Counted from the first letter of the stretch, positions 19,551 to 47,564 are shown. The stretch: 64,000 nucleotides of DNA from Guillardia theta CCMP2712 (GCF_000315625.1 NW_005434667.1:529160-593159); one strand, 5' to 3'. Program-made: numbers and translations. Notes: generated from the letters alone by a model not told the origin.

Positions 19551-20200
19551 ACAACAACGTGAACAACTGTCTATTGTAGCATGCACGGGACAGCATAGGA
19601 CTCATCATGAAAAAAGGCTACGATTCAAAAGAAACGAATCTAGCCGCGAATGTTGAAGTGTTCTCCTGTCTTTCCATGATTCATGCTCTGTGTTGCTTTT
19701 GCATTCATGTGCATCTCCTCCTGCCATCTATCGTCCTCTTGCTCTGTGCTGCCCCCCTAATTCCTCCATGAAAGTGTGTTCCCCAGCTCTATCAAACTGA
19801 AACTATCAAACCGTTACGCACCGTTACAATCACTAGTCAGTGCGAGCCCGGCCATCACTGCTAGCATCACATTTCTTACGACTATGGGGGGTGGCCCCAA
19901 CAGAAGGGAGGAGAGGAGAGGAGAGGAGAGGAGAAGAATATGCAGGCGAAGCGAGACGTAGACAGATGGGACAAGACTCAGATAGAGGGAGCAAAGCGGA
20001 GGGTTGTAGATGCCAGGGTAGAGTAGGTGAATATTGTGACATGGCCCCAAATCGTAGGCGAGAGAATTTCCCTGACGATATGAGGATCCACAACACGTTG
20101 ATGAGTTCCAACTGACTGATAGCTTCTCAGATCCGTTCGGAGTCAAAACTAGATGAATTGAAACATTGTTTACTTGTTACTTTGTCTCGTTTTTTATCCA

Positions 20201-22852: not shown

Positions 22853-25800
22853 ATGGAGACTAAGTCATGGGACGATATATTAATTCACGAGAAGGAGGAG
22901 AACAAACGCTTGTACCAACAGAAGAAAGATCTTGCAGAAAGGGAAAAGAACCTCGCAGCTCGGATTGCTCTGCTGAGCGAACAGAAGAAGTCACTGGATG
23001 ATGGCAAATCTGTGGACGCCGTCAGCAGAGACAGCAAAGTCATCGCTCTGCAGGACAAACTCGCTGCCCTCACTCAACAACAGAAAGAGTTGGAGCTGAA
23101 GCTCAGCGCTGCGCAGAGGAAGTCTCTTCCTGCAACCCCTGAGGGTAAGAAACGACCTGCTTCAGCTGGTGCGCACAAGCAGGCCGCGCCAGCGCAAGCC
23201 ATGGCGCAAGGAGATCCACATGATGCGAGGTTTGTGATCAATGACCTGAAGCAAAAGATCTTGCAGACGAACATCCAGATCAAGAATTTGGAGGAGGAGA
23301 AAGCCATGGCAGACCTTGATTCGACACTCAACCTGTATTCCAACAATGCGTTGTCCAACGAGAATGACCTCAAGGAATTCGAGAGGTTGAAAGAAGAGCT
23401 CAAGAACAGAGAGGCAAAGTACATCCTGGCAAAGAGCAGGTTCGACTCGCTGGACCAAGAGTACAAAGAGTACTTGGAGAAGCATAAGGAGTTGATGAAC
23501 CAGGCCGACGACGTCCAGAAGCAGATCATGGACCAGCAGAAGCAGCAACGCGCAGTCGAGGCTCAAATCAAGCAGCTGAAACTTCGTCGAGACCACGAGA
23601 CGGACCTGAAGAGCATACTGGAGGACATGAAGGAAGAGCTGTCCCTTCTCAAGGAGGAGAATCAGAAGCTGAAGGAAGACAGCATGAGTGGTGAGTCAAT
23701 CATCGCGCAGTCGGAAGTTCAATCCAAGGAGGTGGTGAAGCTGCAAGAAGAGAACGAGACCCTGCTGCAGAGCATCAAGGACAATCAAACACGGGCGGAA
23801 GAGCTGAAGACGCAGCTGGCCGATGCCAAGGAGATTCAGTCAAAGCTTGCTAAAGAAGTGAAGGCGCGAGAGAAGGAGATGATGGAGATGATGAAGACGC
23901 ACGAGTCCTTGACCAACTCCCTGCGAGAATTCATGCAATCAGCAGAGGAGGGGAAGGATGCGGCAGACCTGCTCCATAACAGTTCGATCATTCCCGGTAG
24001 CTCAGAGAAGCCCACCAAGGCGCAGGTATGTTCCATTGCTTACTACGATCTGTTCGCTGATGCACTGATTAGGAGGAAGAGGGAGCGTTGAGGGCTCTTG
24101 AGCAAGTGATGGAGCATGTAGAGGCCAAGGGGATGCGCCCGTCAACGCTCTTTACGGGATGGGATGACAATTCCGATGGTTTCGTATCCCAGGAGATTTT
24201 TGTGGAAGGGATGATGGCGTTGCGAGCTGGTCTACAGAGAGAGGAAGTTCGACGACTGTTCAAGAAGTATCTGAGCAATGCAGAGAGGTCAGAGTTGTCG
24301 GAAGACGAATTCCACAAGATGATGCAAGACGGTGAAGAGGCGCTTGCAAGGAAGAAAGAAGCAGCCGCGGGTGGTGGAGAGGACGTGAACAGGCTGAAAG
24401 CAGAAATCAGGAAATTGAGGGCTGTCAATGGCCAACTTCTTCAAGAGAAGGTTTGTTTCTTCACGGCGACGATCGCATTGAAGTGTGCCGAACAGGATGA
24501 GATGTTTCAGAAGCTGAAGGAAGCCGACAGAATGAGGAAGTCCACGGTATGTTGTTGACGGCGATGAGATGGAATCTTGATGAGCTCCTGATGTGATGTG
24601 ACGACTATGACGATTCTTCTGTACCGCATCGTCCCTTGAGCATCGGCCATGCTGAATGGTCCTCTCCAGGTCAAGAGCGGAGAGCTGGAGAGCGCTGAGA
24701 GGCTTCGAGACCTGCAAACTCGTCAAGTCGGCGTCCGATGCTGAAGAGTTAGACCTGACTGGAGGTGCAGGCGGCGGAGATCAGGAAACTCGAAGAAGAG
24801 CTGTCGCTGGCCAGGTACAACGAGAAAGATCTCGAGCGACTTGTCGAGGCTCGCAACCTTTCGGAGTCTCACGACAAGACCTCTGCCTCTTTGTCCAGCA
24901 AGAAGACCAACTGTTTGGTGAGAAAGAGCTCAGGGAGTGCAAGACAGAGACAGAGAAACGAGTCAGAGAGAGGGAGAGGGAGGTAGGGTCTGGGGAGGGT
25001 CTGGGGAGGAAGATGAGGGTGAAATGTGTACAGCCTTGGGGAGGAGGAGGAGGAGAAGAAGAAGAAGAGGATGGGAGGGTGTGACGGACACCTCCAGATC
25101 CTCAACTTGTCCTCGTTCAAGCTGGAGGAATGGAAGGACGAGGAGCCCACAACCTTCTTCTCCATCGACTTCTTCGCGCATGAGACGCAAGTGACCAACC
25201 CCGTTACCGGCCTTGAAGTGAGCTTGGGATGGAGCCGTGAGTTCGAGCTGGAGGTCGACGACGTCTTCCTTGAGTACGTGGAGAGAGAGTCGATCATCCT
25301 CGACCTCATGAGGAGGACGAGTGGTGAAGTTCCCTTCTCCCGCATGGCGTCGGCTGATGTTCGCCTCGCCCCGCTCATGGAGGATGCTGGCATCCTGAAC
25401 CAACGTCTTGAACTCTTCGGCATTGACGGAAAGAAACTTGGCTACGTCGTTGTGAACATCCGCATGAAGGACTCCATCGCTCCCCTCGTGGCCTCCTATC
25501 GTAGAATCAAAGACAGGACCTCAGAAGCCGCGAGCATGGAAGCTGCCGCCTTCTTCCGCCACATCTCTGTTCCTCTGGACCAAATCGTCCTCAACGTCAT
25601 CGTCGTGCGCTGCCAAGGGCTGCGGTCCTCTCGCTACGGCGTTCTGCCATGGCCGTACGTACAGTACGAGCTTCCAGGGTCAGGGGAGGACCCGCACACG
25701 ACCAAGACGGTGGAGAAGGAAGGAAACCCCGTCTACGAGGACAGGAGGAGCTGGAGGTTGAAGAGCCCTGCGACTGCGTTCGCACTGCGAGACCTCGAGC

Positions 25801-28800
25801 TGGAGGTCTTCGTGTTTGATGACAATGAGACAGACGACCTGCAGGTACGTCGAACACTCACGATCCTTCCACTCCCTCTCCTGCTCCCTGCCCTTCGTGT
25901 GCCTCTTCCTCCTTCGGTCGCTGGCTACCATTTCCTGCGATCTGCTCGTCTCTGGCACTTTATATCTCTTGTTTTGGATTTGCTGCCTCACTCGCCTTGC
26001 AGGCGTTCGTCGGGCTAGCGAAAGTCAGTCTGGCCCAGCTCTTCCAACAGGACAGCCCCAAGATCGATGGAGATTTTCGGCTGCAAGACAGCAGAGGAGC
26101 GGAGAATGGCACGATTTCCTTGCAGATCTCCTGGTCCAGAAGCGAGACCTCCTCCCCTGCCCCTTTTCCCGTTGAGGGCTCCGAGAAGAAGGCAGCTCCG
26201 AAAGAAGCGTCCCCGCAGGATAGCATGAAAAAGTTCTTCGATCTGATATCAAGAAGAGGACAGGATCACCTCAAGTCTTTCGATGAGATCGATGCGAAGA
26301 AGGACGGCATAATAGACGAAGACGAGTTCATGGCGGAGATGGAGAAGCATTCCTCCTCGATCTCAAAGTCGGAGGTGACGGCAACCCTAAACTGCCATTT
26401 CCTCCTCGTTCTCCTTAGATCTTCCCATTGAGCTCCTCCAACCTACTCCGTGCTCAGTCTCACTCCGCTCGCAGGCAAAGAGTCTCTTCCAACACATGCG
26501 CGAGAGACGAGGAGCGATCGATGTGGCAAGCTGGCACTTGAATAGCCTTCCTACCCTCAAGACTGCGATTATCACAGCTAATCCCCCTGAGATAGAAGGA
26601 AACATTGTCTTCCTCCTCAAGAATTTATCGGTTTGTCTCTTTTCCTCTGATTTCCCCTACTTCACAACCTCACCATGTTCCCTCCTCTTTCAAGTGTCAT
26701 TCTGACTTGCCTACCAGTTCAACACAGACTTGCTTTCAGTTTGCGACCTCTTGAAGTTTGAGGTTGAGGTTTCGAGACTTGAAGACAGAAAGCAGACAAG
26801 TCGGGTCTACGAGACACCCTCACGTGACAAGTCGCTCTCGACGTTCGAGAAGTTTGCGATCAGAGTCGGCCAGGAGCAGGTGAGCAGCGGCAGACGCTTT
26901 TGCTGTTTTGATCTTAAGGCTGTCCAGGATGTTGTGACGAGGCTGGAGCCGATCTTCTCTCAGAGTTCAACGTCGGAAGTTCACCTCACCCTCGCGGTGA
27001 AAGGGGTGACTTTCGATCGTGTGCTACAAGAGAAGCAAGTGCTGGCAACCTGCAGGCTCGACCTCAAGAAGCTTTGGAGGGAAGGGAAGGACCGAGAAGA
27101 GCTCGCGAGCCCTGTACGCTCCTCTCTCCCCTCGGGGCTCTGTTGACTCATGGCTCACCAGATCATGGATGCAAGGCAGCATGAGGTTGGGACTGTAAGG
27201 GGCTCGCTCTATCTGATGCAGGTGCTCACCTCCTTCCTCCTCCCTTCCTCCTCCTCTCCTGTCTTGTCCCATCCTTGAGTCTTGTAGGTGACTTGCTGCC
27301 GCAGCCCCTGTCCAAGATCGAGAAGCTGGTCACAAAGGCAGCAGAGGCCGAGCAAAAGGCTGCGAAACAGAGCGTGTCCTCCTCCTTCTCCAAGCTGAAG
27401 CCAGGCACCGGCCATATCCAGCTCCAGCTCCAGCAGATCAGTCTGCAGGATCCCTCTGACCCAGCGATCAAGGAGGCAGGGGCGAACTTGTGCGTCTCTG
27501 CCAACTTCTTCGACCTGCAGACAGCAGAGGAGGAATGGAAACAGCGATCCTCCTCCTTCGACCTGGTGAGCTCAGGCGAGCCTGTGCTTGGCAGCTCTGA
27601 TCCGCCTCCTTCAGCCGCAGTCTCTCCATCTGAACCACATGATCGAATTTCCCATCGACGCAGAGCACAACGAGAGTCACCTGAACTACTTCGTGCGCTG
27701 CTTGAAAGCAGATGAGGACAGAGACAGGGGAGCGATCAAGGTCCTGCTGCTCAACAGCCCCAAGGACGGTGGAGAGGAAGGAGGCGAAGCTGCCAAGGTG
27801 CTGGCTGTCTCTCAGCTCTCCATCTTCGACCTCCTTCACCTTCGGCCGGAGGACAACCAGGTCGGTCAAGTCCGACGTGTCCCTGATCGCTGACCGCGAG
27901 CTAGCAGGAGTTGAAGTGCAGCGCAAGGCTGCTGGAGCCAAAGACGTCCAGAGTCATGGGAGAGGTGGTGGCGACCTTGAAGTTGCAGAACCTGAACATA
28001 TTCAACTTCACGAGTTGCACTTTCAGCCCCCATGACCTGGAGAGGCACGTGGGCATCTTGCTGAAGAGTGTTGCTCTTCGCCCCAGCGCGCATGTCAGGG
28101 ACGTGGAGAGAGTGAGTCTGGTCGTCGATCTTGAAGGTTGCGCGAGTTACAGGTCAAAGGCTGTGTTTGTCAAGGAGACGTCAGTTGACCAGGTGCTGTG
28201 GGAGGCATCGTAATGCTGCTGACGTCACGTCAGAAACTGCGAGAGAGATTGTCTCTGAATGAGAAGATCCTGGTTGACGTGGACAAGTATCCTCTGATCA
28301 GCTCGAAGCTCGCCGCAGGGAGGAGGATGGAAGTCAACATCACGTTGATCAGCGCCAGCGATTCATCCGTCGTTGCCGAACTCCACGAGACCTCACTGGT
28401 GCTGTCGGCGGAGCTCGCAATGGACGCGTTTGACCTGTTTGGTATCAGAGTCTGGAGCAAGACCTGCGTGACCGCGAGTTCGAGCTGAAGGACAAGGCCG
28501 GGCAAGTAGCTGCTATTTGCAAGATCGACTGGTTGGCCGACAAGGCTGTGCCGGTGAGTGTTGGAGTGACGCTGAAAGTTCTTGACGAGTCAGCAGGCTG
28601 CGGGCAAGGTTGAGGTCCCGACGAGCAAGCTCGGTTTCACCTTGAAATCTGTGATGACGAACAACCCGCCATGGCCTCGCTCACATGTTTACAGCTGTCG
28701 TTGGAGAGCGGCGACCAGTCCAAGAGCGAGGAGGTGGAAGACGTTGTGGTTGAGCTGAAGGTGGTGGGAGAGGTCAGCTGAAGCTCGGCTGTGCTCTCAA

Positions 28801-33432: not shown

Positions 33433-34654
33433 CTCCTCGGGTTGCGCGAGGAACCTGCTGGTCGTGGAGGTCGAGGTCACTTGCCGTGCGAGGGCAACGA
33501 AACTGAGAGCGAAGAGGAGGAGGAAGAGGAAAGTCTGAAAGTTCACGCGAGGTGGGGAGAGGGATGTTTGACTTGCGAGCAGCATGGCAGGGGAGATGTA
33601 ATCATCGCTGCTCTCCTTCCCTCCTTCCTGATGTAGATCAAATTAATCAACAAAAGTACAGGTTGCAACGCTTCTCCTCTATCCCACACGTCCTCCCCTC
33701 CTTTCCGTTGCCTTGCCTCCCTTCATCTCCTCCCCTCGCTCTCTCCCTCTCTCCCTCGCCCCCCTGTCCGCCCCCCCTCCCGGTCTGCCCTCCCTCCCCT
33801 CGATTTTGCTCGGCCCCCCTATTAACGTAAATCCGCCCACTCGTTTCCCTCCTGCAACCCTCCATGGCCGTACCCTCCCGCCCCCTCCTCCTCCTGGCGG
33901 CCCTCACGACGCTGCTCCTGTCTTTGTTCGACTGAAAGGCGGAGCGGAGGGTGGAAGGGAGAGCGAAGGGAGGAAGGGAGAGTGAAGAGGATAATGAAGG
34001 ACTTGCACTAGAGCTCGGCATTCTTCCTTCGAGGCGCTGGAGGACCAAGGTCCAAGCACGTGGCTCAATGCTCAGCTTACAAACATCTCCGGCCTATAGT
34101 TGTTTCCGTTGAAGGGAAGCGATTCATACAGGAGCACTCTCTTCCTTACCTCGAACAAGCTCTCCCTTCCTCTCGGCCCACCCCATGACACACTCATCAC
34201 AAAACTCCGTCCTCCTCAAACCTTTGCCCGCAGTCTCTTCGTCAAAGTGGCGATAGATGAATCACAGATGGATCACAGATGTAGACGCTGTGAAGCTGAA
34301 CGGAAGAGATGTACAGAGCACAATCTAACAGCATTCAAATACCCACACCTCACACAGACAAGTATCAAACAAACAACTTCTACCTTCTTACCAGACAACA
34401 GCATTCTCGACTCATCATCTTCTCTTACATTTATTAACACGTTCGCCTCCCAATCTTATTCCCCCTCATCAACGAAGAGAGGTACTTCTCAATGCACCTG
34501 TCCCACTCCAGCAGCTTGCTGACCTATCTCCACATTCCCCAGTGAGGCCTCATCTGGTTGCACGATCTTCTCTTCCTCCCCTCCTCTTTCCACTGCAATC
34601 TCAACATTCTGGTTTCCTACAGGAGCATCGCTCGCCTCCTTGATGGTCTTGAGT

Positions 34655-37600
34655 TCAGGTTCCATCTTGACAGGTTCGATCCCTTCCAGGTATCGAGGAG
34701 AAACAGAACTCTCTACCCAGAACGTCTGCAGCGCCCACCAGTCAGCCTCCTCGAAACCTCCCGCACAACACGCCTCCTCACCTTCATCTCTCCCTTCCCT
34801 TTGATTTGGATCGTGCCGCGAGGGACCAGGTGAACTTCCGTCCCCTCTGCCTGTTTCTTGAGCACCTCGGCAGCTCGCTCGGAGCAGTGGATCTTGAGAG
34901 CCTCGGAGTTGGACTCCATGCGCGAAGCTGTGTTCACCGTGTCTCCGAAGAGACAGTATCGCAGGTTCCTCGTCCCCACCACGTTGGCCACCACTGGCCC
35001 GCAGTGGAAGCCGACTCGGATCTGCACGGTGCCCTTGGAAGGATCGTCAAGGTCGACGGGGGTCGACTGCGCAGCCTTGATGGCTCCGATGGCGAAGCGA
35101 GCGATCCTCAAGGCGTGGTCGAAGGGCTGGTCCTCCACCAGGTTGGTCACCGCCATGTACGCATCGCCGATGGTCTCGACCTGGAGGAGCGCAGCTCTTA
35201 CTCTCCTCGCACGTGGTCAGGGCAGAGCACTCACCTTGAAGACGCCGTAGGTGCTGGACAAGCGGTCGAAGACCGAGTAGAGCCGGTCGAGCATGTTGGA
35301 GACCTTGACGGGGTCGAGGGTGCTGCTGATGGTTGTGAAGCCGACGATGTCGGAGAAGAAGATGGTGACCATGTCACGGCGCTCAGGCTCGACCTTGCGA
35401 CCTTCGCGCAGAGCGTTTGCAACGTGACGCCTGCGAGCAAGGATTGTCATGGCATGAGGTGACAGGCAGCGGGCAGAAGGCAGCAGAAGAGGAGGAGAGA
35501 GCAAACAGGCGATGCTCACGGGAACACGTCGTATAGAAGCTCCTCGTGCGACTTTCCACTAGCATTTGACGGCCTGTGCGGTTGATATCCTGATATCAAG
35601 CTCGAAATTGGCCCGGCATGCTGAGCATCCAGAGCCTTCAGGCGGCGCTCGACCTCCTCGAAGGGAGGGCGGAAGACAGGGTTCTTGTGCCAGCAGTCCT
35701 TCATGATGCTCACCACGTCCGAGGGACACGCGGGAGGGATGGCAGGACGCTTGTCCACCGGCCGTTTGAGATCGGCCACCTCCTCCAGCACCGTCCTGGT
35801 ATCCTCTCCCTCATACGGATCCCTGCGGCTGTACACCTCTGCGAGCACGATGCCGAAGGCATACACGTCGGTCTGCGGAGTGTTGGTCCCTCCGTTGAGC
35901 AGCTCGGGGGCCATCCACAAGGGAGTGCCGCAAGCTCCCAGCTGCTTCTTCTGGCTGAGACCGAAGTCAGCGACCTTGGCTCGGAACTTTGAGTCCACCA
36001 GGACGTTCTGTGCTTTGAGATCGCCATGGACGATGAGCGGGTCTGCTGCATGAAGGAAGCGCACGCCCTGAGCGATGTCGCGGAGGATGGGAAGGATTGT
36101 CTCCCCCTCGATCACCATGGTCTCGTTGTGGAGCAAGTCGTACAGAGACCCGTGATCCATGCACTCCATGATGAGCATGGGCTCCGTGTTCCTGTCTCCG
36201 ATGATCGCGCCCATGACGGTGGTGATGCAGGGGTGGCGGAGCTTGGAGAGGATACGCATTTCTTGGACGAAGTTAGCCTTGAGCTCGGCGTGCTTGTCCT
36301 TCTTGAAGACGCAGAAAGACAGGAGGCCAGATTCCATGTCATCATCATCGTCAGAAGATTTGTTATGAGAACCCGAGCTCAGACCCATCACAGATCCTGT
36401 ACCATTGGTAGAGAATCCTTTCAAAGATCCCCGAGTGAAGTGTTTTGACGATCCCGGTCCTGCAGCCATACTAGCATGTGCAGCGTTAGGAACAACCTGG
36501 TTTGTTGAGCTTTTCTTGCGGTCCTTGTTCTTCTTCGGGGGGATCACCCTCTTGACCGCTACTGTCGTTCCTCTGTACTCAGCTTGCACAACAAGTCCGA
36601 AGGTGCCACGTCCAAGGATCTCGACGGGGTTGTTGTACTGAAGCTCATCAGGCCTGACCAGCCACAGGGAGTCTTGTTTCCTGATCTGATGCTGCAGCCA
36701 GAGCCAGACCAAAACCATCAAAACCAAGACAACAGGAACGACGATGACAGGGATGAACCAGGCAAGGCTGAGACAATTAGACCCCGAACGAACTGAGTAA
36801 CTGTCACAAACACATTCTCCTTGTGCTGTTGGAATATGATGAGTGCCGTACTCAGCCACGCAGTCACGACTTTTGACTTCAATGAAAAGCGGGGACTGTG
36901 ATATCTGCACGCCGTCTGCGAAGATTTCCACCAGCCATTGACCCTTTTCCGCAATGTCCAGCGACAACCTGTACTGATAGCTGCCCAGCGCCTCTGCCGT
37001 GCCCTCCTGGATAGTCAAGGTGTGAAGCTTGAAGCTGACGTTCAGGTTAGCTCTCTGAAGGTTGTCCAGCACCCTGCAATCCTTCTCAGTGATGACTCAT
37101 CTCTACTCTCCCTCTTTCTCATCGTATCTCTCCCTTCCCCCTCCCCTTCAATCCCCTCCCTCCTCCCACCCCTCCTCCCTGGCTGGGTCTTGCCATCACC
37201 TGAAGATAACCGAAGTCTTCTGCGACGTGATGCCGCACACTGACATCTTGGGACATCCTACCTTGTTCTTGACATATGCTGCAGCTTGAGTGCTGTTGAT
37301 TTCCTGGAACACATCCACGTCGAAGGCCTGAGTGCAAGGCTTGCAGACACACTGTGACCCCGACGGACACGTTCGCCCCTGGCTTGAGCATCCGTCCGCT
37401 ACATCCTGGGGGCTATTCTTGAAGTATCCTGGGGGACATACGATGGAGTCATAGATCGCTGTACCTCGGATACACTCCATCTGGCCCGTGACGGGGTTCT
37501 TGGCGATGAAGTCCAGCGACTCTTGCATGTTCCTTAGCTCCATGTACGACAGCGTCGGGATCCATCCCGCTGACCCACTGGCCTTAGCGGCAGGGTCCGT

Positions 37601-38668
37601 CGCCTTCATCTCCATCAAAGCTCGTTGCACCTCTCGCTGTAGACACACAATACTCATTAGCTCTCCTCCCCCCCCGACCCCCGCCCTCCTTTTACCTGCA
37701 CTAGCCAGTTGACATGATCGAGCGCCGCCACGTTCCACTGGGGATACAAGACCGTCGAAGACTCGAAAGGGTACGGCTGGCCGTTCTCGTATACCTTGAC
37801 TGGCGCCAGATACCGGAAATACGACTTCTTCGTCTTACCCTGCCGACACGTACAAGACGTCAGTCCCTTCCAAGGCACAGCTCAGCACTCGCCCACCTCG
37901 CTCTCCATCAGCTCGATCTGGTTGGTGCGTACGAAGCCGACGTCGACCTTCTTTTGGTACACCATGTTGACCACAGTACCTTGGTTGGACGTGAAGACCA
38001 GCTGGGCAGGGTCTTGGATGTAGTTCAGGCCGTTGTCGACCATGACGCGGAACTGCGCTTGCCCCGACCCCAGCCCGGATATCGAAGCCGCCGCAACTGC
38101 ACAAAACAACAGTCTGTCAGCCCAGCATGTCACGTCGGCGATGCGTCAGGCGGCAGCCCTTACTTGACTTGTCCTTGAGGTCTGCGATGGTTTTGATGTC
38201 CGTCCTGTCGGCTCGGACGAAGATGACGCCTCCAAACAGGGTGAAGTCGTACGTCTTGTCGCCAAGCTTCTGCGCTCCTATCTGGCTTACCAAGGACGAG
38301 GCTCCGTACTGAGACTCGATGCAGGAGTAGGCAGACGGGTTGACGTAGATGAAGTCGACGAACTTGGTCTCTACCCACGTGTAGAGGGTGGTGAAGTTCA
38401 GAGGTACCATGGTGAAGCTGATCTTAGGATAGAAGACGTCTCCGAGCTTCCTGTTGAGGTACTCTCCGAAGGTGAGGTTGAACTGCTCGTAGGCAGCATC
38501 GACGCCTCGGATAGCGAGCACGCCTACTTTATAGGAGTACTGTGTGACTGTACTTGGGAGGGTGACGTTAGGAGCTGGGCAGGAGGAGGCGTCGACAGTA
38601 GTATAAGGAAAGAGAACGGTCAGGGCGAGAAGGAAGAGGGGAAGTAATCGAGGAGAAGGAAGAACCAT
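34655..38668 (-). CDS. Receptor kinase-guanylyl cyclase, copy A: signal peptide, TtrS/PhnD-like sensor, Cys-rich/Ig-like stalk, TM, protein kinase, class III cyclase
   Basis: Sensor motifs VGVLAIRG...FIYVNPS...[10 protein letters not shown]...[13 protein letters not shown]; [24 protein letters not shown]. Kinase motifs [24 protein letters not shown]. Cyclase motifs [39 protein letters not shown]. Confidence 0.92.
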
Positions 38669-39039
38669 TCTTGTCTTCGCGATGCACCCAGAAATTCAGG
38701 TATGACTCATCATGGCAAGGAATATTAAGGTGCGACGGGCAGAGGAGAACCTAAGAATCAATGTCAGGATTCATACCCGCAAATGGATTCTTCAACTGGC
38801 TCCTATTATAAACAACTTGGTTTTCACTGGCACTAATGCCAAAAATGCCCATACTGTGAGAGGGGGAACTCGAGATGGAAGGGTCATCGATTCCACGATC
38901 GAAAGGAATGGTATGTTTGAACGATGAGGAGGGGATAAAACTTGAGGACACAAGTAGACGGAGCAGGAGGCATTCAAAAGCTGTCTGCCTGCAGCAACTA
39001 CATTGATCGCTACCACAGCCCTGTTGCTCGCATCAGCAG

Positions 39040-39660
39040 GGTGAAGGGGGTAAAGTTGGAAGGAGGGGGTAGTCCATTGAGGCGGTAGATTCCTAACTAG
39101 AGAGGACCGGGTCCAAGCTGTATGAAACAGGGGTGGTCCAGGCGAAGTAATAGATTTGGAGTAGGATATGGGTACAAGAGGTCTAATTAGAGAGGGGACG
39201 GGGTCAGTGGGGTAGGGCTACTTCCGAGGCTTCGTGCGTTAGTCAGTGACCAGGAGAGGCGGGGGATACTTGTTTCATTCGAGTGAATAAATTCTTCTCG
39301 CATATTTGAATAATTCAGCAGAATTTTCAATGGTTGCGTTTGTATATTCAAGTGTATCCACGGAAAGGCCTGAGATGAGGGTGGTCAGTAGGTCCGTCCT
39401 GCACCATGAACTACCACCCGGTGGGATATATGGGTTTGTCTGGCCATTAGTTGGGGTGGGTCCTGTCATCCGAGCCCGGCCCGCGTATAAGTGCATTGTA
39501 GCCCGGCCGGCACTGGCGGGGGAATCATCGGATCATTGGGAGGTAGACCCCCCTCCTACCACGTAACTTACTAGTAAGAATGGGGGTGCCTGGCAGCCTC
39601 TCTTTCGGAACTGAAATTGAGTAAAGAAACCAACTGAGGGGACTCGGAAGCGGCCGAACC
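39040..39660 (-). other. GGGT-rich tract (ACCC-rich on the minus strand) upstream of receptor copy A
   Basis: Reverse-orientation version of the intergenic ACCC signature (ggggtagggc, ggggtggg). Confidence 0.5.
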
Positions 39661-39696
39661 CCCTGCCCGACCTATACTTCCATTATCAGTTTACCA

Positions 39697-40010
39697 CTCC
39701 TCCTCCTCCTCCTCCTCCTCCCACCTCCCTCCTTCCTACCTGCCCCCGCCTCCTCCCTCCTCCCTCCTCCCTCCTCCCTCCTCCCTCCTCCCTCCTCCCT
39801 CCTCCTTCCTTCCTCCCTGCCCCAACATTCCACCTCCTCCCTCCTCCTCCCTCCCCATCTCCTCCACTCACCCAATACCCTTCCCCCCGTCCTCACCTCT
39901 CCCCTTCCTCCCTCACTCCCAACACCTCTTCTGCCCTCCTATCTCTCTCCATTATCCTTGCTTCCTGTCTCCCCGGCTCCTGCCCTCTTCTGTTCCAGGC
40001 TCTTGTCCTC
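39697..40010 (+). repeat. Polypyrimidine (CCT/CCTCCCT)n low-complexity tract
   Basis: Read directly from the sequence. Confidence 0.9.
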
Positions 40011-43000
40011 AAGGCGTCGGCAGCAGCTGCTTTCCTATGTTTCCTCTCTCTCGTGTCCGATACCCTTCTGTGTTTTCGTCAGAGAAAGCAGCACGAAAAC
40101 TATCCGCCTCCTCCTCAACGCTCGCCAGTAAATCTGCTGCTGCAACTTCGCACCCATCGAGCGTCAACTTTCGATGAGAGCCTTGGCGTTCAAGCACACG
40201 AACGGCAGGAGCATCGAATCCCTGGCGGAAGACAGCCACATCCACATAGCAGCGCTGAAACGACGTGGAGGCATGATTACACTCGCAACTCCTCCTCCTG
40301 ACGCTTTCTTGCAGAAACTCTCGCACCTGATTTCTCAAGGATAGGACGTGAATGCCCGTATCCGCTCCACCGACACGCCGGTGCTGCTCGCTACCTCGCT
40401 GGAAAATGTTGCTTGCGGTTGATGCTATTGCTGCTTTGCCTGTTCACAGGATGATGATGATGATGATGATAAAGAACAATTTTGGTAATTCTCTACAGTG
40501 ACTTTCTCATGTCCCTGTAGTCCGCCTTCATTTCTTGCCATCAGTGTTCAAGCTTCTCCATAACATTCCGTGCCTTGCAAAAGTTTTGCCGCATCCTTTT
40601 CTTGCGGATAAATTCCGGTTTCAACTTCTTCAAGGGGCATATCTTTCTTGCTATTCCATTCTCCTCAAATTGTTCCCCACAGTTCCAACTGGAACGGTAG
40701 GAGGGAGGAAGGGGAGGAGCCACAGGTTCTTACAATCAACCTTCTGCACGAAAGCGTAATTTTCAAGAACCGTACAGATCTCATCTGTGTCCCACTTAAA
40801 CAAATCTCGTAAGTAGAACTGGTGCGTCCGTGCCGACACGTGACACCCAGGTCATGTCCGACATGCCCAGTGCCGACTCCAAGGTCCGACCGTCATGCCT
40901 CCGGGTCTATCACATCCACTTGTAACTTGTGTGCTTCTCCTGTGACATTTGTAAAAAACTGTCGTAACCATGACTGAATTTGTTTAAGCTCTCGATAATT
41001 TCATACCGTGGCATCATGGCAAAGCCGCGACTGCGGCAGTCAGTCACAAGTTCAAGTGACAGTAGTGCACCGTACTATCATGAGTCATTTGAGTCCGATC
41101 AGGACTCCGGGAGTCCCGGCCGGCCGGCCGCCGGCCCGGCGGCGGCGGGCCGCCAGCCGCCGAGTCTTTCGTTTGCCTCGTGCTAGGCCTTTCTAGGGCT
41201 CTCTCCTAGCACTTGGGGGGTAGGGGCAAAGGCTATGGTCCTAGAGTATGTATGCCGTAGCTCCCTAGCACTAGCTAGGCGCCTCCTGCATGTCGCTCGG
41301 TACCCGGTTGGGAGCGGGCGGAGAAATCAGACAGCAGAGCGAAGGAAAGGCCGGGATTCATCGGAAGAAGGATAGATCGTGAACGAGTGCGGGACGAAGC
41401 AAGAGCAGAGAGGAAATCAGTGGGCAAGAGGGCTGTCTCCTCAAACAGCGGCCATCAGTGAGGACCGGCGCGGTGCAGTTCTCCAGAGTAGGAGATGTAT
41501 GAATCGACCACAACATCGATTCCAACCCGATTAAAGCAGCACAGTCTTGCTAACCACGGAATGCTTCCAGACAAAGACGATGTTCAAGAACTTGTGATTT
41601 ATCTCACCCTGCTTTTCATTGTGCTCTCATGGATGCTTCGAGAGATACACATAGCCTTTTTCACGGAAGATTCTGAAACGCCATATAGACGAGACCCTCG
41701 GAGCGATGAAAACTCTGGAAACCCTCCATCAACTACAAACAGCGATTGTTAATGGGACGAACTAGAATGTTATTGAGAAGACCCTTGTTGAACTACTGAC
41801 TCCACCGCCCCCCCCCCCCCCCCCCCCCCTCCGCAACCCTCGATGATTGGGATGATGACTGGGATATCAGCATTGACATCTTTTTCAATTCTTTGGATTT
41901 GGTTTCCATCAGAGAATCATGTTTATGAACGAGATTGGCTGAAAAAAAATCTTTCATCTAAACGGACTGATACCTTCAAGCAAATCGTGCTGCGGGAAAG
42001 CAGCTTGCTTCACTTTTTGATAGGTTACTTGTTTCCAATTTGGATTGCATCATTGAGTGAATTATTCTGCTCTTGTGACACCTAGCAGCCATGCCTATCC
42101 TCCTGGAGTAACTTGATTTACTTCAGACCGATTACTTGATCATGTGTTTTCACTCTCAAGGCAGGCGAACAGAGCAAACCTTGCTGTTCAGTTCCGCTGG
42201 CCATGGATGTTTCTAGATCGATCCCGCCACATATTTGCTTGCCTCATCTGAATTTCTCGTCTGATTCAGCTGCTTGGTGTCTGCTTTCATCTTCTGTCTA
42301 CGATCGGCCTGTTCCTCTCCATATTTCGATTTCCTGTGCTGAATACCTCGACTCCCCCGACTCAAGATGATCGATCATCTTGCTAAGTTGCAAGTTCGCA
42401 TGCTCATTCATAGTCACGTCCGCCTTCACGCAAGTGTAATTTAGAAATCAGTATGAGGACAATCAGGACTAGCACTGCGGCACTCAACATTTACTCAAAG
42501 TTAAGTTAAAAATCAGTACGAGGACAATCAAAAGTTCCGGCACACAGGGGGCTCAGGCTGCGTATGACGCATTATTATTACTTTACTTTGAGTAAAGAAC
42601 TGAAGAATGATTATTATTATCTATTGTTCTTTTATGGTCTATTGAGCGCGTCGAGGTTCAAGACGGTACCACCGCAATACTCGAATTGTTCTGGTAGACC
42701 AGGCAGGGGGTCTTGCTATATGTCAATGAGGGGTGGTGGAGGATACCTCACCATATACTATAAATCTTTCAATAAATTTTATTGTCATCTTCGTCCCCAC
42801 GATATCTTTCACCCTGTCAGCATCCGCCGCAACACCCTACCCCCTCCTATATCACGTGATACTAGAACCCTACCTCCTCCTTGCCTAGTATGGTACCCCA
42901 CCCATTCTACTTCAGTGATATCCTGGCAATACCTCCACCCCACCCTTCCCTTGAACGGGCTCACGAAGAACCCCCTCTTTGGCCTACATTGTTCTGAAGA

Positions 43001-43528
43001 ACCACCCCTACTTTGAGTGACCCCTTACCGCACCCCTCCTACCCCACCGAGTGTGCTATCCATTGTTGCTGGTCCCTCCATGGTCCCAGACGCCCCGCAG
43101 AAAGGCGGCCAAGGCGCGGAGTACGGATGTAGAGAAGGGAGCATGAGAGAAGGAATGGAGATGGAAAGACTCGCACAGGATAGTGCTGCAGTAGTAGACT
43201 CAGACGAGTTTTCAACAGCTAGCCTCCATGATTGAAACCAGAATGTGACTGGAGTTCGGGTTGTTACATTCGAGGAAATCTTGAGGCAGGCGGGGAGAAA
43301 AGACGTGATTGTTAGGCAGAGGGCATGAAAACGTGATGTAATAGAAATGCTGTGAATTCTCCTTATGAGTGATCGGCTAAGTCTCTCTGTAGATAACTCA
43401 CGGGTTCTTGATTGTTTCCTTGGCAGGATAGGGACCACAGATTCAACTCCATCAAACATGCGTTGTGACGAATAAGAGACGATTCTCCGAGATTCAAGTG
43501 ATCGTCAAGTGAAAGGATTCAGGGAAGG

Positions 43529-46500
43529 ATGCTCTCTTCTTCTAGACACGTCCTGCTTTGTTTTCTCGCCCTTTTCGTCCTCGTTGCGGATGCTGCTGTG
43601 GACAACTCGTCCTGCCCAGCTCCTAACGTCACCCTCCCAAGTACAGTCACACAGTACTCCTACAAAGTAGGCGTGCTCGCCATCAACGGATTCGCAGACG
43701 CAAATGCGAAGTACAAACTCATGTTCGAAGAGTACCTCAACAGGAAGCTCCGAGACGTCTTCCACCCTAAGATCAACTTCACCATGGTACCTCTGGACTT
43801 CACCACCCTCTACACGTGGGTAGAGACCAAGATCGTCGACTTCATCTACGTCAACCCGTCTGCCTACTCCTGCATCGAGTCTCAGTACGGAGCCTCGTCC
43901 TTGGCCAGTCAACAAAGTATACAGAAGCTTGGCAACGACACTTACGACTTCGCCCTGTTTGGAGGCGTCATCTTCGTCCGAGCCGACAGGACGGACATCA
44001 AAACCATCGCAGACCTCAAGGACAAGTCAAGTAAGAGCTGCCGCCTGACGCATCGCCGACGTGACATGCTGGGCTGACAGACTGTTGTTTTGTGCAGTTG
44101 CGGCGGCTTCGATATCCGGGCTGGGGTCGGGGCAAGCGCAGTTCCGCGTCATGGTCGACAACGGCCTGAACTACATCCAAGACCCTGCCCAGCTGGTCTT
44201 CACGTCCAACCAAGGTACTGTGGTCAACATGGTGTACCAAAAGAAGGTCGACGTCGGCTTCGTACGCACCAACCAGATCGAGCAGATGGAGAGCAAGGTG
44301 GGCGAGTGCTGAGCTGTGCCTTGGAAGGGACTGACGTCTTGTACGTGTCGGCAGGGGAACACCAAGAAGTCGTATTTCCGGTATCTGGCGCCAGTCAAGG
44401 TATACGAGAACGGCCAGCCGTACCCTTTCGAGTCCTCGACGATCTTGTATCCGGAATGGAACGTGGCGGCACTTAGTCATGTGCATTGGCTGGTGCAGGT
44501 AAAAGGAGGGCGGGGGTCGGGGGGGGGGGGAGGAGAGCTAATGAGTATTGTGTGTCTACAGCGAGAGGTGCAACGAGCTTTGCTGGAGTTGGATCAGTCG
44601 GACCCTGCCGCCAAGGCAGCAACGGTCAAGGGATGGATCCCAACGCTGTCGTACATGGAGCTGAGGAACATGCAAGAGAAGCTAGACTTCATCTCTAAGA
44701 ACCCCGCCACGGGCCAGATGGAGTGTATCCGAGGTACAGCGCTCTATGACTCCATCACTTGTCCCCCAGGATACTTCAAACAGACCCAAGCAGAAGTCGA
44801 AGCAGGGTGTGCCAAGTTAAAATTGACTTGTCCCGTTGGCTCATCGTGCACGTGCAAGCCGTGCACCAAGGCGTTTGACGTAGATGTCATTCAAGTGAAT
44901 GACACGCTGACGGCAATCGCAAACAATGGTCAAACGTACCTTGGATGTGCGAAGATGACGACGTGTGCTCTAAGTCGACAGAAGTCGAAGTTCAAATTCA
45001 GGTCTTCTTATTTTTCGTTAGTCCATCGTCCGATTTCTGATCGACTCAAAACAGTGTGATTGACAACAAGAAGCGAGACAACATGGTGTTCACATACATC
45101 TTGCACTTGACAGACAGATTGGTGAAAGGGCAGGCAAATAAAACCACGACTCTTTACAGCTACGAGATTGTTGAAGAGATCGATTTCAAGGGTCAGTGGC
45201 TCATAGAAATCTTCGCAAACGGTGAACAAATCAATGAGTCCCCTCTTTTCATTCAAATCGCCAGTCGTGATTGCGCAGCCGAATATGGAGCAAACTCTCT
45301 GCGAGTAGCGACAGATGCAGGTGACTGTGTGTGCAACAGCCGATCATTCAAATCTGGAAGCAAGTGTGTCGACCTAGCCTGGTTCATCCCTGTCATCGTC
45401 GTGCCGATTCTGTTGCTCCTTGTGTTAGCAGTGATCATGTGGATGAGACATCAGATTAGGAAACAAGACTCCCTGTGGCTGGTCAAGCCTGATGAGCTTC
45501 AGTACAACAACCCCGTCGAGATCCTTGGACGTGGCACCTTCGGACTTGTTGTGCAAGCTGAGTACAGAGGAACGACAGTAGCGGTCAAGAGGGTGATTCC
45601 CCCGAAGAAGAACAAGGACCGCAAGAAGCGAATGAGCGCAGAGTCCATGGCTCACACAAGCATGTCAGGATCAGCAAGAAACATGTCAAGAGGGTCCGTG
45701 AAAGGATTCTCTACCAATGGTACAGGCTCCCTCATGGGATTCAATTCAGGCTCTCAGAATGGCTCCTCCTCCATGGACGAGGACGACATGGAATCTGGCC
45801 TCCTGTCCCTCTGCGTCTTCAAGAAGGACAAGCACGCCGAGCTCAAGGCTAACTTCGTCCAAGAAATGCGTATCCTCTCCAAGCTCCGCCACCCCTGCAT
45901 CACCACCGTCATGGGCGCGATCATCGGAGACAGGAACACGGAGCCCATGCTCATCATGGAGTGCATGGATCACGGGTCTCTGTACGACTTGCTCCACAAC
46001 GAGACCATGGTGATCGAGGGGGAGATGATCCTTCCCATCCTCCGCGACATCGCTCAAGGCGTGCGCTTCCTTCATGCAGCAGACCCGCTCATCGTCCATG
46101 GCGATCTCAAAGCACAGAACGTCCTGGTGGACTCAAAGTTCCGAGCCAAGGTCGCTGACTTCGGTCTCAGCCAGAAGAAGCAGCTGGGAGCTTGCGGCAC
46201 TCCCTTGTGGATGGCCCCCGAGCTGCTCAACGGAGGGACCAACACTCCGCAGACCGACGTGTATGCCTTCGGCATCGTGCTCGCAGAGGTGTACAGCCGC
46301 AGGGATCCGTATGAGGGAGAGGATACCAGGACGGTGCTGGAGGAGGTGGCCGATCTCAAACGGCCGGTGGACAAGCGTCCTGCCATCCCTCCCGCGTGTC
46401 CCTCGGACGTGGTGAGCATCATGAAGGACTGCTGGCACAAGAACCCTGTCTTCCGCCCTCCGTTCGAGGAGGTCGAGCGCCGCCTGAAGGCTCTGGATGC

Positions 46501-47564
46501 TCAGCATGCCGGGCCCCTTAGCGTGTTTGCTGGATATCATCACAAGACTTTGGACAATGGAAAGTCGCACGAGGAGCTTCTATACGACGTGTTCCCGTGA
46601 GCATCGCCTGTTTGCTCTCTCCTCCTCTTCTGCTGCCTTCTGCCCGCTGCCTGTCACCTCATGCCATGACAATCCTTGCTCGCAGGCGTCACGTCGCCAT
46701 CGCTCTGCGCGAAGGTCGCAAGGTCGAGCCTGAGCGCCGCGACATGGTCACCATCTTCTTCTCCGACATCGTCGGCTTCACAACCATCAGCAGCACCCTC
46801 GACCCCGTCAAGGTCTCCAACATGCTCGACCGGCTCTACTCGATCTTCGACCGCTTGTCCAGCACCTACGGCGTCTTCAAGGTAAGTGCTCTGCCCTGAC
46901 CACGTGCGAGGAGAGTAAGAGCTGCGCTCCTCCAGGTCGAGACCATCGGCGATGCGTACATGGCGGTAACCAACCTGGTGGAGGACCAGCCCTTCGACCA
47001 CGCCTTGAGGATCGCTCGCTTCGCCATCGGAGCCATCAAGGCTGCGCAGTCGACCCCCGTCGACCTTGACGATCCTTCCAAGGGCACCGTGCAGATCCGA
47101 GTCGGCTTCCACTGCGGGCCAGTGGTGGCCAACGTGGTGGGGACGAGGAACCTGCGATACTGTCTCTTCGGAGACACGGTGAACACAGCTTCGCGCATGG
47201 AGTCCAACTCCGAGGCTCTCAAGATCCACTGCTCCGAGCGAGCTGCCGAGGTGCTGAAGAAACAGGCAGTAGAGACGGAAGTTCACCTGGTCCCTCGCGG
47301 CACGATCCAAATCAAAGGGAAGGGAGAGATGAAGGTGAGGAGGCGTGTTGCAGTGCGGGAGGTTTCGAGGAGGCTGACTGGTGGGCGCTGCAGACGTTCT
47401 GGGTGGAAGAGCGGAAGATTTCGACCACCATAGTCGAGAGTGCCACGGAATTCGAAGAGTTTGAAGTCTCCGCAACTCCTGCCAGGATGTCAATTACTGT
47501 CACTGACAACATCACTATGGACGCAGACCTAGGGTTCAGTCACTCAGGTCGCCAACTAGCCTAG
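43529..47564 (+). CDS. Receptor kinase-guanylyl cyclase, copy B (inverted paralog of 34655-38668)
   Basis: Same domain order and intron positions as copy A, with long near-identical blocks. Last exon is TFWVEERK...GRQLA*. Confidence 0.92.

What the first reader, a model, noticed from the sequence alone, without database searches (positions are those of the whole stretch)
34655..47564. Receptors wiring a bacterial TtrS/PhnD-like oxyanion sensor to a eukaryotic kinase and guanylyl cyclase
Seen: both genes encode signal peptide > sensor domain > Cys-rich stalk > single TM > kinase > class III cyclase. The ectodomain motifs (VGVLAI[R/N][48 protein letters not shown]) follow, in order, those I recall from the phosphonate-binding-type periplasmic domain of the tetrathionate sensor kinase TtrS (IGILAMRG, FVITNP, GSVILTRRD, TSTPLYPDWSFAAL). 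Established: Glu in KVETIGD and Cys in RYCLFG specify GTP. Inference: a bacterial two-component input domain has been re-wired into a cGMP/phosphorylation receptor, possibly sensing sulfur or phosphorus oxyanions. Similar architectures may be annotated in other algae, but I know of no characterised ligand.
Basis: partly seen in the sequence, partly recalled or inferred. Interest (0 to 1): 0.88.

Follow-up and report, generated by a model that had tools for sequence, protein, structure and literature searches.

The report
Algal receptor guanylyl cyclases with bacterial-type sensor
Two neighbouring genes of the alga Guillardia theta each encode a cell-surface receptor joining a bacterial-style small-molecule-binding domain to a protein kinase and a cGMP-making enzyme; the family is common but unstudied in cryptophytes and diatoms, and its ligand is unknown.

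Summary
The window is Guillardia theta CCMP2712. It holds two head-to-head paralogues, each with 8 exons and 7 short GT-AG introns: gene A on the minus strand (38668-34489, 1223 aa) and gene B on the plus strand (43529-47564, 1197 aa).

Each encodes, in order:
- a signal peptide
- a PhnD/TtrS-type class II periplasmic-binding domain (an AF2 model of the 87%-identical orthologue has pLDDT 95.6; best folds are PtxB, HtxB, ArrX, AioX and PhnD)
- a Cys-rich module, a filamin-type Ig domain and a second Cys-rich module
- one transmembrane helix
- a TKL-type kinase with all catalytic motifs intact
- a class III cyclase whose GTP-specifying Glu and Cys match human GC-A.

A complete 1194-aa transcript ORF in a cluster that includes Hanusia phi is collinear with gene B and confirms all seven splice junctions. 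This rules out the public annotation, which cuts the sensor off as a 248-aa "partial" protein.

The architecture is not unique. It is frequent in diatoms, where it is auto-named "receptor-type guanylate cyclase". The same ectodomain is also fused to GC/PDE, histidine-kinase and class C 7TM outputs. The nearest bacterial relatives are sensor kinases and chemoreceptors, none of them a true TtrS. I found no paper describing this ectodomain. The ligand is unknown.

The parts
43529..47564 (+). Gene B: 8 exons (43529-44030, 44098-44297, 44355-44498, 44562-45001, 45055-46596, 46686-46881, 46936-47334, 47394-47564), 1197 aa
   Evidence: The model has 7 GT-AG introns of 53-89 nt. All junctions are confirmed by the collinear, 87%-identical complete transcript ORF P0229. 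The intron 1 junction 44030/44098 appears in a contig of run X1, whose RNA origin is only a guess.
34489..38668 (-). Gene A: 8 exons (38668-38164, 38096-37897, 37839-37696, 37636-37200, 37073-35520, 35430-35235, 35180-34782, 34725-34489), 1223 aa
   Evidence: The model was built by analogy with gene B. All introns are GT-AG, 54-126 nt, and the protein is 77% identical to B. The last exon and stop codon are unverified.
43529..43594 (+). Gene B signal peptide (aa 1-22)
   Evidence: N-terminal hydrophobic stretch. The cleavage site is inferred.
43661..44693 (+). Gene B PhnD/TtrS-type class II periplasmic-binding domain (aa 45-326; spans exons 1-4)
   Evidence: Pfam PF12974 and the TtrS model hit the exons. 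The orthologue scores 87.2 bits on PF12974 and E 6e-27 on TtrS. The AF2 model has pLDDT 95.6. Foldseek matches PtxB, HtxB and ArrX with TM up to 0.81.
44694..44888 (+). Gene B Cys-rich module 1 (aa 327-391)
   Evidence: The Cys residues are invariant across 50 homologues. Model md969d41f474a.
44997..45259 (+). Gene B filamin-type Ig domain of the stalk (aa 428-497; crosses intron 4)
   Evidence: The AF2 stalk model has pLDDT 87.5. Foldseek matches filamin repeats, including dimerising repeat 24, with TMt 0.62-0.69.
45260..45373 (+). Gene B Cys-rich module 2 (aa 498-535)
   Evidence: Invariant Cys residues and model.
45374..45442 (+). Gene B transmembrane helix (aa 536-558)
   Evidence: It is the only internal hydrophobic segment, with maximum KD 3.2.
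45497..46495 (+). Gene B TKL-type protein kinase (aa 577-909) with a roughly 90-aa Ser/Gly-rich insert
   Evidence: Pfam PK_Tyr_Ser-Thr at E 7.5e-53. The motifs [21 protein letters not shown] and APE are all present. The best PDB hit is CTR1 at 9e-39.
46568..47405 (+). Gene B linker helix plus class III guanylyl cyclase domain (aa 934-1145; exons 5-8)
   Evidence: Pfam Guanylate_cyc. The best PDB hit is ANP receptor 1 at E 3.7e-52 for the orthologue. VETIGDAYM and [17 protein letters not shown] are identical to GC-A.
38594..38668 (-). Gene A signal peptide (about aa 1-25)
   Evidence: N-terminal hydrophobic stretch.
37505..38533 (-). Gene A PhnD/TtrS-type binding domain (aa 46-327)
   Evidence: 83% identical to gene B over exon 1. 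Same motifs.
36767..37504 (-). Gene A stalk: Cys-rich 1 (37310-37504), filamin-type Ig (36875-37204), Cys-rich 2 (36767-36874)
   Evidence: Assigned by alignment to gene B and P0229. This is the most diverged region between the paralogues.
36698..36766 (-). Gene A transmembrane helix (aa 532-554)
   Evidence: Maximum KD 3.07.
35630..36643 (-). Gene A TKL-type kinase (aa 573-910)
   Evidence: All kinase motifs are present. Nearly identical to gene B outside the insert.
34714..35548 (-). Gene A linker plus guanylyl cyclase (aa 938-1149)
   Evidence: Motifs. 97-100% nucleotide identity to gene B, introns included.
38669..43528 (.). 4.86-kb spacer between the two divergent start codons
   Evidence: The inverted repeat stops within a few bases of the two ATGs. 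The spacer has no long ORF and no Rfam match. Any promoter content is inferred only.

Best explanation
Each gene encodes one single-pass type I membrane receptor, and the receptor works as a dimer. Outside the cell, a bilobed Venus-flytrap domain of the PhnD/TtrS type binds a small soluble ligand, most likely an anion. This domain sits on a disulfide-rich stalk containing a filamin-type Ig domain that may help hold two chains together. Ligand-induced closure of the flytrap is passed through the stalk and the single transmembrane helix to an intracellular TKL-type kinase that looks catalytically competent, and on to a class III cyclase. The cyclase can only be active as a dimer and is built to use GTP. 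The outputs are therefore cGMP synthesis plus protein phosphorylation, either autophosphorylation that gates the cyclase or phosphorylation of other substrates. The design logic matches animal natriuretic-peptide receptor cyclases, with two differences: the sensor is a type II PBP whose nearest relatives are sensor domains of bacterial signalling proteins, and the kinase is not degenerate. Shown here: the gene structure, domain order, folds, catalytic and specificity residues, single-ORF status in an orthologue, and family distribution. Inferred: the ligand class, the signalling direction, the activity of kinase and cyclase, and the dimer.
For: The gene models use canonical introns. The complete orthologous transcript ORF P0229 is collinear over aa 20-1193 and confirms all junctions. 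Many further complete transcript ORFs carry PF12974, kinase and Guanylate_cyc together. The ectodomain scores 87 bits on PF12974 and E 6e-27 on the TtrS model. Its AF2 model has pLDDT 95.6 and matches the oxyanion binders PtxB, HtxB, ArrX, AioX and PhnD (profile search). Residues conserved between the eukaryotic and bacterial sensor domains are retained, including D86, D144, R206, T207, S244, T245, E250 and W251. The stalk Ig domain matches filamin repeats, including the dimerising repeat 24. There is one transmembrane helix and an N-terminal leader. The kinase has all catalytic motifs and its best match is CTR1. The cyclase has both metal-binding Asp, the Asn and Arg, and the Glu and Cys identical to GC-A.
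Against: No G. theta transcript spanning the whole gene was recovered; only the intron 1 junction was seen, in a run whose RNA origin is a guess. No biochemical data exist for any family member. The Ser/Thr anion-binding motif of PhnD and PtxB (STS) is replaced by SISGLGSG, and bacterial sensors have ETSLGGW at that place, so anion binding is not assured. Each paralogue carries one odd substitution at a near-invariant site: T to M at model position 47 in B, and E250 to Q in A. The kinase is non-RD (HGD) and carries a large insert, so its activity is not certain.
Confidence: 0.78

Rival explanations
1. The ligand is not an inorganic sulfur or phosphorus oxyanion but an organic signal. Candidates include a sulfated, sulfonated or phosphonate metabolite, a pheromone-like compound, a pterin or nucleotide, or even a lipid such as a sterol. 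The receptor mechanism is otherwise as in the best explanation.
For: PF12974 members bind varied ligands. Methylococcus BstB binds 4-methylsterols (PMC10942540), and XAC2383 was crystallised with ATP. The canonical STS motif is not conserved. The family has expanded into many paralogues in diatoms, which suits diverse infochemicals. Seminavis GC/PDE genes are induced by the sex pheromone SIP+, a sulfated anionic metabolite, and their extracellular part was proposed as its receptor (PMC4726125). Three Seminavis GC/PDE proteins carry this ectodomain.
Against: All the closest solved structures by fold are oxyanion binders. The only characterised sensor-kinase relatives, TtrS and ThsS, sense tetrathionate and thiosulfate (PMC5408782). 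I did not show that the SIP-responsive gene Sro991_g228730 itself carries PF12974.
Confidence: 0.45
2. The kinase acts only as a regulatory, ATP-binding module like the animal kinase-homology domain, and cGMP is the sole output.
For: It occupies the same position as the kinase-homology domain of GC-A. It is a non-RD kinase (HGD) with a long low-complexity insert between strand beta3 and helix alphaC.
Against: The Gly loop, VAVK Lys, alphaC Glu, catalytic Asp and Asn (HGDLKAQN), DFG and APE are all intact and near-identical in both paralogues and in P0229. The same kinase also sits upstream of histidine-kinase outputs, or stands alone, in relatives.
Confidence: 0.25
3. The locus holds separate genes, as in the public annotation: a secreted or partial binding protein and an independent kinase/cyclase.
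For: NCBI and JGI list only a 248-aa partial protein, GUITHDRAFT_51158, for the sensor of gene B. No G. theta protein of 657 aa or more covering the junction is in the protein collection. RNA coverage was too thin to link the exons.
Against: The orthologous complete transcript ORF is continuous. Intron 4 is only 53 nt. Exon 5 starts with about 100 extracellular residues before the transmembrane helix and has no leader of its own. The annotated model skips 26 residues that are conserved in every homologue. More than 100 homologues show the same fusion.
Confidence: 0.03
4. One paralogue has altered or lost ligand binding and serves as a modulatory heterodimer partner of the other.
For: Gene B has Asn in place of the Arg of the LAIRG motif, and Met in place of a Thr that is conserved in 91% of eukaryotic and 100% of bacterial members. 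Gene A has E250Q. Exon 1 and the stalk diverge (37-89% nucleotide identity) while the kinase, the cyclase and even the introns are kept 96-100% identical by gene conversion. Near-identical cyclase halves would pair readily.
Against: Both ectodomains keep almost all other conserved positions and an open frame. There is no expression or interaction data.
Confidence: 0.15

Closest known systems
Animal receptor guanylyl cyclases (GC-A/NPR1, GC-C)
   Same: Both have a single-pass topology, an extracellular PBP-fold ligand-binding domain, an intracellular kinase-like domain, a linker helix, and a homodimeric class III cyclase with the GTP-specifying Glu and Cys. The cyclase is the best PDB sequence match (E 3.7e-52) and its active-site motifs are identical.
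   Different: The ectodomain is a type II PBP (PF12974) rather than the type I ANF_receptor fold. A Cys-rich and filamin-Ig stalk is inserted. The kinase keeps all catalytic residues and is TKL/CTR1-like rather than a degenerate kinase-homology domain.
Bacterial TtrS/ThsS-type sensor kinases and other membrane sensors with an N-terminal PF12974 domain
   Same: The sensor domain is homologous over its whole length, including the C-terminal helix and the STxLYPEW motif. These proteins are the nearest bacterial relatives, and TtrS is the best NCBIfam model.
   Different: There is no HisKA/HATPase output. The score is 94 bits against a cut-off of 750. The loop reads SISGLGSG rather than ETSLGGW. 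Eukaryote-specific Cys residues and a 5-6 residue insert are present. None of the sampled bacterial relatives is a true TtrS either.
Diatom 'receptor-type guanylate cyclases' and GC/PDE fusion proteins (Seminavis robusta, Cylindrotheca, Nitzschia and others)
   Same: They have the same ectodomain, stalk, transmembrane helix, TKL kinase and cyclase. Identity is 41-46% over the full length.
   Different: The Guillardia genes lack the PDE domain and belong to a separate cryptophyte clade. The diatom proteins are known only from transcriptomics, and the fold of their extracellular part has not been described in the papers I could search.
Periplasmic oxyanion-binding proteins PtxB, HtxB, PhnD, ArrX and AioX
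   Same: They share the fold (Foldseek E 1e-13 to 4e-17, TMt up to 0.81) and profile-level sequence similarity. ArrX and AioX also act in signalling.
   Different: Those are free soluble proteins that dock onto transporters or kinases. Here the domain is covalently tethered to the signalling chain, and the STS anion motif is not conserved.

Membership tests
Pfam PF12974 Phosphonate-bd (PhnD-type class II PBP) | HMM score above the gathering threshold (27 bits) over most of the profile | tested here: met
   The orthologue P0229 scores 87.2 bits over profile positions 15-237 of 242. The window exons score 26.7 and 19.3 bits separately because introns split the domain.
Pfam PF12974 Phosphonate-bd (PhnD-type class II PBP) | Bilobed alpha/beta fold with two hinge crossovers | tested here: met
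   The AF2 model has pLDDT 95.6 and pTM 0.90. The top 42 Foldseek hits are all PtxB, HtxB, ArrX, AioX, PhnD, XAC2383 or GpxB. The model is of the 87%-identical orthologue, not the window protein itself.
Pfam PF12974 Phosphonate-bd (PhnD-type class II PBP) | Ser-Thr-Ser anion-binding loop at a helix N-terminus, as in PhnD and PtxB | tested here: not met
   The profile alignment places SISGLGSG opposite the ASTSSH of PtxB. The loop is Gly-rich instead. Whether it still binds an anion cannot be told from sequence.
TtrS tetrathionate sensor kinase (NCBIfam NF040750, equivalog) | Whole-protein score of at least 750 bits | tested here: not met
   94.3 bits, covering only sensor positions 5-245 of 555.
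TtrS tetrathionate sensor kinase (NCBIfam NF040750, equivalog) | HisKA plus HATPase_c transmitter after the sensor | tested here: not met
   The output is PK_Tyr_Ser-Thr plus Guanylate_cyc.
TtrS tetrathionate sensor kinase (NCBIfam NF040750, equivalog) | Tetrathionate as ligand | not testable with these tools
   This needs binding assays.
Receptor (membrane) guanylyl cyclase | Signal peptide, extracellular ligand-binding domain and a single transmembrane helix | tested here: met
Receptor (membrane) guanylyl cyclase | Type I PBP (ANF_receptor) ectodomain, as in the animal family | tested here: not met
   There is no ANF_receptor hit; the domain is PF12974.
Receptor (membrane) guanylyl cyclase | Kinase-like domain between the membrane and the cyclase | tested here: met
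   Pfam E 7.5e-53. Unlike the animal version, it has intact catalytic motifs.
Class III nucleotidyl cyclase, GTP-specific | Two metal-binding Asp, the transition-state Asn and Arg, and Glu and Cys at the base-recognition positions | tested here: met
   [18 protein letters not shown] and [17 protein letters not shown] are present and align identically with human GC-A. The role of the Glu and Cys is established knowledge from GC-to-AC conversion mutagenesis of retinal and soluble GCs.
Active eukaryotic protein kinase (TKL group) | Gly loop, beta3 Lys, catalytic HxD...N, DFG and APE | tested here: met
   [21 protein letters not shown] and APE are present in both genes. The best solved relatives are CTR1, TAK1 and RIPK1. 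Activity itself was not tested.

The most novel reading that the evidence does not exclude
The TtrS-like ectodomain is a receptor module for sulfated or sulfonated organic infochemicals. On this reading, the family would include the long-sought receptors for diatom sex-inducing pheromones (SIP+ is a sulfated anion) and for algal-bacterial organosulfur signals. The Guillardia pair would be its cryptophyte branch, reading such cues out as cGMP.
Probability: 0.12. Interest if true: 0.85.

Novelty: new variant of a known kind. Interest (0 to 1): 0.6.

Why it matters
Diatoms and cryptophytes carry dozens of "receptor-type guanylate cyclases", and cGMP is implicated in diatom sex-pheromone and bacterial-cue responses. 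Yet no ligand or sensor fold has been assigned to any of them in the papers I could search. Recognising the extracellular part as a PhnD/TtrS-type binding domain has three consequences. It gives a concrete, expressible ~300-residue module to screen for ligands. It shows that one sensor module feeds cGMP, cGMP/PDE, His-Asp phosphorelay and class C GPCR outputs in algae. It also corrects a split gene model in the Guillardia reference genome.

Tried and rejected
1. RNA support in G. theta was thin. One raw RNA run gave only 22 reads. Contig runs showed only the intron 1 junction, and one run (X13) behaves like DNA. The exons could not be linked directly.
2. The look-up of encoding contigs for the annotated fragment returned nothing.
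3. The search for related loci on bacterial genomes failed because alignment A1 was too diverse. The bacterial sample in the tree is therefore only the 12 best hits, and there is no transport-PBP outgroup.
4. A single-sequence PDB search of exon 1 found nothing. A profile search was needed.
5. I could not reach the model coordinates, so there is no pocket or electrostatics analysis.
6. I tried to check whether the SIP-responsive Seminavis gene Sro991_g228730 carries PF12974, but it is not in the supplements held.
7. The other PF12974-like loci in G. theta are unrelated PBPs: NMT1/THI5, a PBP2-RING protein and a stand-alone 292-aa ORF.
8. The search of earlier findings returned nothing.
9. Bacterial contamination is rejected: the genes have spliceosomal introns, eukaryotic kinase and cyclase domains, and eukaryotic neighbours.


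Full report
**What is there.** The window is scaffold C7:529160-593159 of an 87-Mb, 669-contig assembly. An exact match of part of gene B to XP_005839909.1 identifies the organism as Guillardia theta CCMP2712, a cryptophyte alga.

ORF listing and hand-built splice models give two divergently transcribed paralogues. Their start codons are separated by a 4.86-kb spacer.
- Gene B lies on the plus strand at 43529-47564 (1197 aa).
- Gene A lies on the minus strand at 38668-34489 (1223 aa).
- Each has 8 exons and 7 GT-AG introns of 53-126 nt.
- The proteins are 77% identical overall.

**Are sensor and kinase/cyclase one gene?** The public annotation says no. The only model covering the sensor of gene B is a 248-aa "partial" hypothetical protein (GUITHDRAFT_51158). 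It also skips 26 residues of exon 3. A search scored on the region joining ectodomain to kinase found no G. theta protein of 657 aa or more in a 5.8-billion-protein collection.

My reads experiment was weak. It showed only the intron 1 junction (44030/44098), in a run whose RNA nature is a guess.

The decisive evidence is comparative.
- P0229 is a transcript ORF flagged complete (1194 aa), in a cluster that includes Hanusia phi, a close relative.
- It is 87% identical to and collinear with my gene B model from residue 20 to 1193.
- It has no gap at any of the seven junctions, and it contains the 26 residues the annotation dropped.
- More than a hundred further proteins, many from complete transcript ORFs, carry PF12974, kinase and cyclase in one chain.
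- Exon 5 encodes about 100 extracellular residues before the only transmembrane helix and has no leader of its own. Intron 4 is only 53 nt.

I put the two-gene reading at about 3%.

**The ectodomain.**
- Split by introns, the window exons score just under the Pfam threshold for PF12974 (26.7 and 19.3 bits). The intact orthologous domain scores 87.2 bits over nearly the whole profile.
- Against NCBIfam, the best model is the TtrS sensor kinase (E 6e-27, sensor positions 5-245). The transport families score far lower: TIGR01098 at 2e-12 and PhnD at 1e-5.
- An AF2 model built from an 81-sequence alignment has pLDDT 95.6 and pTM 0.90.
- Its best structural matches are PtxB, HtxB, ArrX, AioX, PhnD and XAC2383, with target TM-scores up to 0.81.
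- A profile search of PDB sequences finds the same proteins.

It is not a TtrS, however. It scores 94 bits against a cut-off of 750, and it has no histidine-kinase transmitter.

The canonical Ser-Thr-Ser anion loop of PhnD and PtxB is SISGLGSG here, and ETSLGGW in bacterial sensors.

Residues shared by the eukaryotic and bacterial sensor domains are kept. These include D86, D144, R206, T207, S244, T245, E250 and W251 in model numbering. Eukaryote-specific cysteines are added.

**The stalk.** Between the binding domain and the membrane lie about 210 residues that are conserved in 160 family members, with 11 invariant cysteines. The AF2 model (pLDDT 87.5) shows a Cys-rich module, a beta-sandwich and a second Cys-rich module. 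The beta-sandwich matches filamin repeats, including the dimerising repeat 24, with TMt 0.62-0.69. The "Cys-rich stalk" is therefore a defined Cys-rich, filamin-Ig, Cys-rich unit.

**The intracellular part.** The kinase has every catalytic motif: [21 protein letters not shown] and APE. It carries a Ser/Gly-rich insert of about 90 residues. Its best solved relatives are the TKL kinases CTR1, TAK1 and RIPK1. It is a non-RD kinase, not a degenerate kinase-homology domain.

The cyclase with its preceding linker is most similar to human ANP receptor 1 (E 3.7e-52). VETIGDAYM and [17 protein letters not shown] align identically with GC-A. Both metal-binding Asp, the Asn and Arg, and the GTP-specifying Glu and Cys are therefore in place. 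The role of that Glu and Cys is established knowledge from cyclase specificity-swap mutagenesis.

**Family and origin.** An exhaustive HMMER search with exon 1 found 1268 relatives, 203 of them at E 1e-10 or better.
- The closest are eukaryotic. Cryptophyte members include Hanusia, Chroomonas, Hemiselmis and Geminigera. Diatom members include Seminavis, Cylindrotheca, Nitzschia, Amphora, Attheya, Rhizosolenia, Coscinodiscus and Staurosira.
- The same ectodomain and stalk is joined to five kinds of output: kinase plus GC; kinase plus GC plus PDE; kinase plus HisKA/HATPase, with or without a receiver domain; kinase alone; and a class C 7TM domain.
- The nearest bacterial proteins are membrane sensors with N-terminal PF12974. 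They are histidine kinases, hybrid kinases, a chemoreceptor and PAS proteins. None reaches the TtrS cut-off.
- In a quick ML tree, 12 bacterial sensor domains are separated from 71 eukaryotic ones by a fully supported branch. The output types are interleaved among the eukaryotes. The Guillardia pair plus P0229 forms a fully supported clade, inside a small group that is sister to a large group of the remaining members, including the named diatom sequences.

This fits one ancient acquisition of a bacterial sensor-type domain followed by domain shuffling. The bacterial sample is small and the root is assumed, so the direction of transfer is inference.

**Relation between the two copies.** Nucleotide identity is mosaic.
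- Introns 1, 2, 3, 5, 6 and 7 are 98-100% identical.
- Exon 2, most of the kinase and the cyclase are 96-100% identical.
- Exon 1 is 85% identical and exon 4 is 69%.
- Intron 4 and the 5' part of exon 5 (the stalk) are 34-68% identical.
- The last exon is 40% identical.

This is the signature of gene conversion between inverted repeats that spares the ligand-side and tail regions. Gene B has Asn for the Arg of LAIRG and Met for a Thr that is conserved in 91% of eukaryotic and all bacterial members. Gene A has E250Q. The two sensors may therefore differ in specificity.

**Mechanism.** I read these as dimeric receptor guanylyl cyclases in four steps. The flytrap closes on a small, probably anionic ligand. 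The change passes through the stalk and transmembrane helix. The kinase is activated or re-oriented. The two cyclase halves come together to make cGMP. Only the anatomy is shown; every functional step is inferred.

The ligand class is open.
- Characterised relatives bind phosphite, phosphonates, arsenate, arsenite, thiosulfate or tetrathionate.
- PF12974 members also bind sterols, and one was crystallised with ATP.
- Moeys et al. proposed that the extracellular part of a Seminavis GC/PDE binds the sex pheromone SIP+, which is a sulfated anion (PMC4726125). Three Seminavis GC/PDE proteins carry this ectodomain. I could not establish that the SIP-responsive gene is one of them.

**Novelty.** Eight literature searches found no paper that identifies this ectodomain in eukaryotic cyclases or kinases. 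These included searches for "PF12974" and "Phosphonate-bd". Diatom papers speak only of an "extracellular stretch".

The architecture is, however, visible in automatic annotations such as "Receptor-type guanylate cyclase gcy" with PF12974. The Guillardia genes are thus new, mis-annotated members of an uncharacterised family. That family is a variant of the receptor-cyclase design with a different class of sensor and a live kinase. I rate interest at 0.6.

Noticed in passing
window 43661-44693 (gene B sensor): The public G. theta annotation holds only a 248-aa 'partial' protein here (GUITHDRAFT_51158 / XP_005839909.1). It uses an internal acceptor that drops 26 conserved residues of exon 3 ([26 protein letters not shown]), and it is cut off from the kinase and cyclase.
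   Followed up: yes
window 34489-38668 versus 43529-47564: Identity between the inverted paralogues is mosaic. Six of the seven introns are 98-100% identical, while exon 1, the stalk, the kinase insert and the C-tail are 37-89% identical. This points to gene conversion tracts that spare the ligand-side regions.
   Followed up: yes
G000:C7:479110-480010 (L011:5110-6010), about 50 kb before the window: A third, much more diverged copy of the ectodomain and Cys-rich region sits here (32-41% identity, with in-frame stops or introns). No kinase or cyclase match lies within the 4 kb downstream. It may be a pseudogene or a receptor with another output.
   Followed up: partly
G000:C2:1138924-1139672 (-) and C2:1147215-1147972 (+): This is another head-to-head pair of cyclase loci, with the cyclase domain split at the same position (profile positions about 54/49) as in the window genes. 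It may be a second inverted pair of receptor cyclases with a different ectodomain.
   Followed up: no
whole genome G000: At least 78 Guanylate_cyc matches were found, many of them paired within one ORF. Guillardia therefore has a very large cyclase repertoire, of which only the two window genes carry the TtrS-like sensor.
   Followed up: partly
P0028, P0145 (metagenomic relatives): The same type II PBP ectodomain is fused to a class C GPCR 7TM domain (7tm_3). It takes the place that class C receptors normally fill with a type I Venus-flytrap.
   Followed up: partly
window 44098-44217 (exon 2 of gene B): In run X1, contig word depth is about 900-1500 over this 120-nt stretch only and near zero elsewhere in the gene. 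This is unexplained. The stretch is the 99%-identical exon 2 shared by both paralogues, but that alone does not explain the depth.
   Followed up: no
window 16509-18725 (-), 20174-21052 (+), 25026-26018 (+): The neighbouring ORFs are ordinary eukaryotic genes: a choline-transporter-like protein, a class I methyltransferase and an RPGRIP1-type C2 protein. None has a functional link to the receptors.
   Followed up: partly
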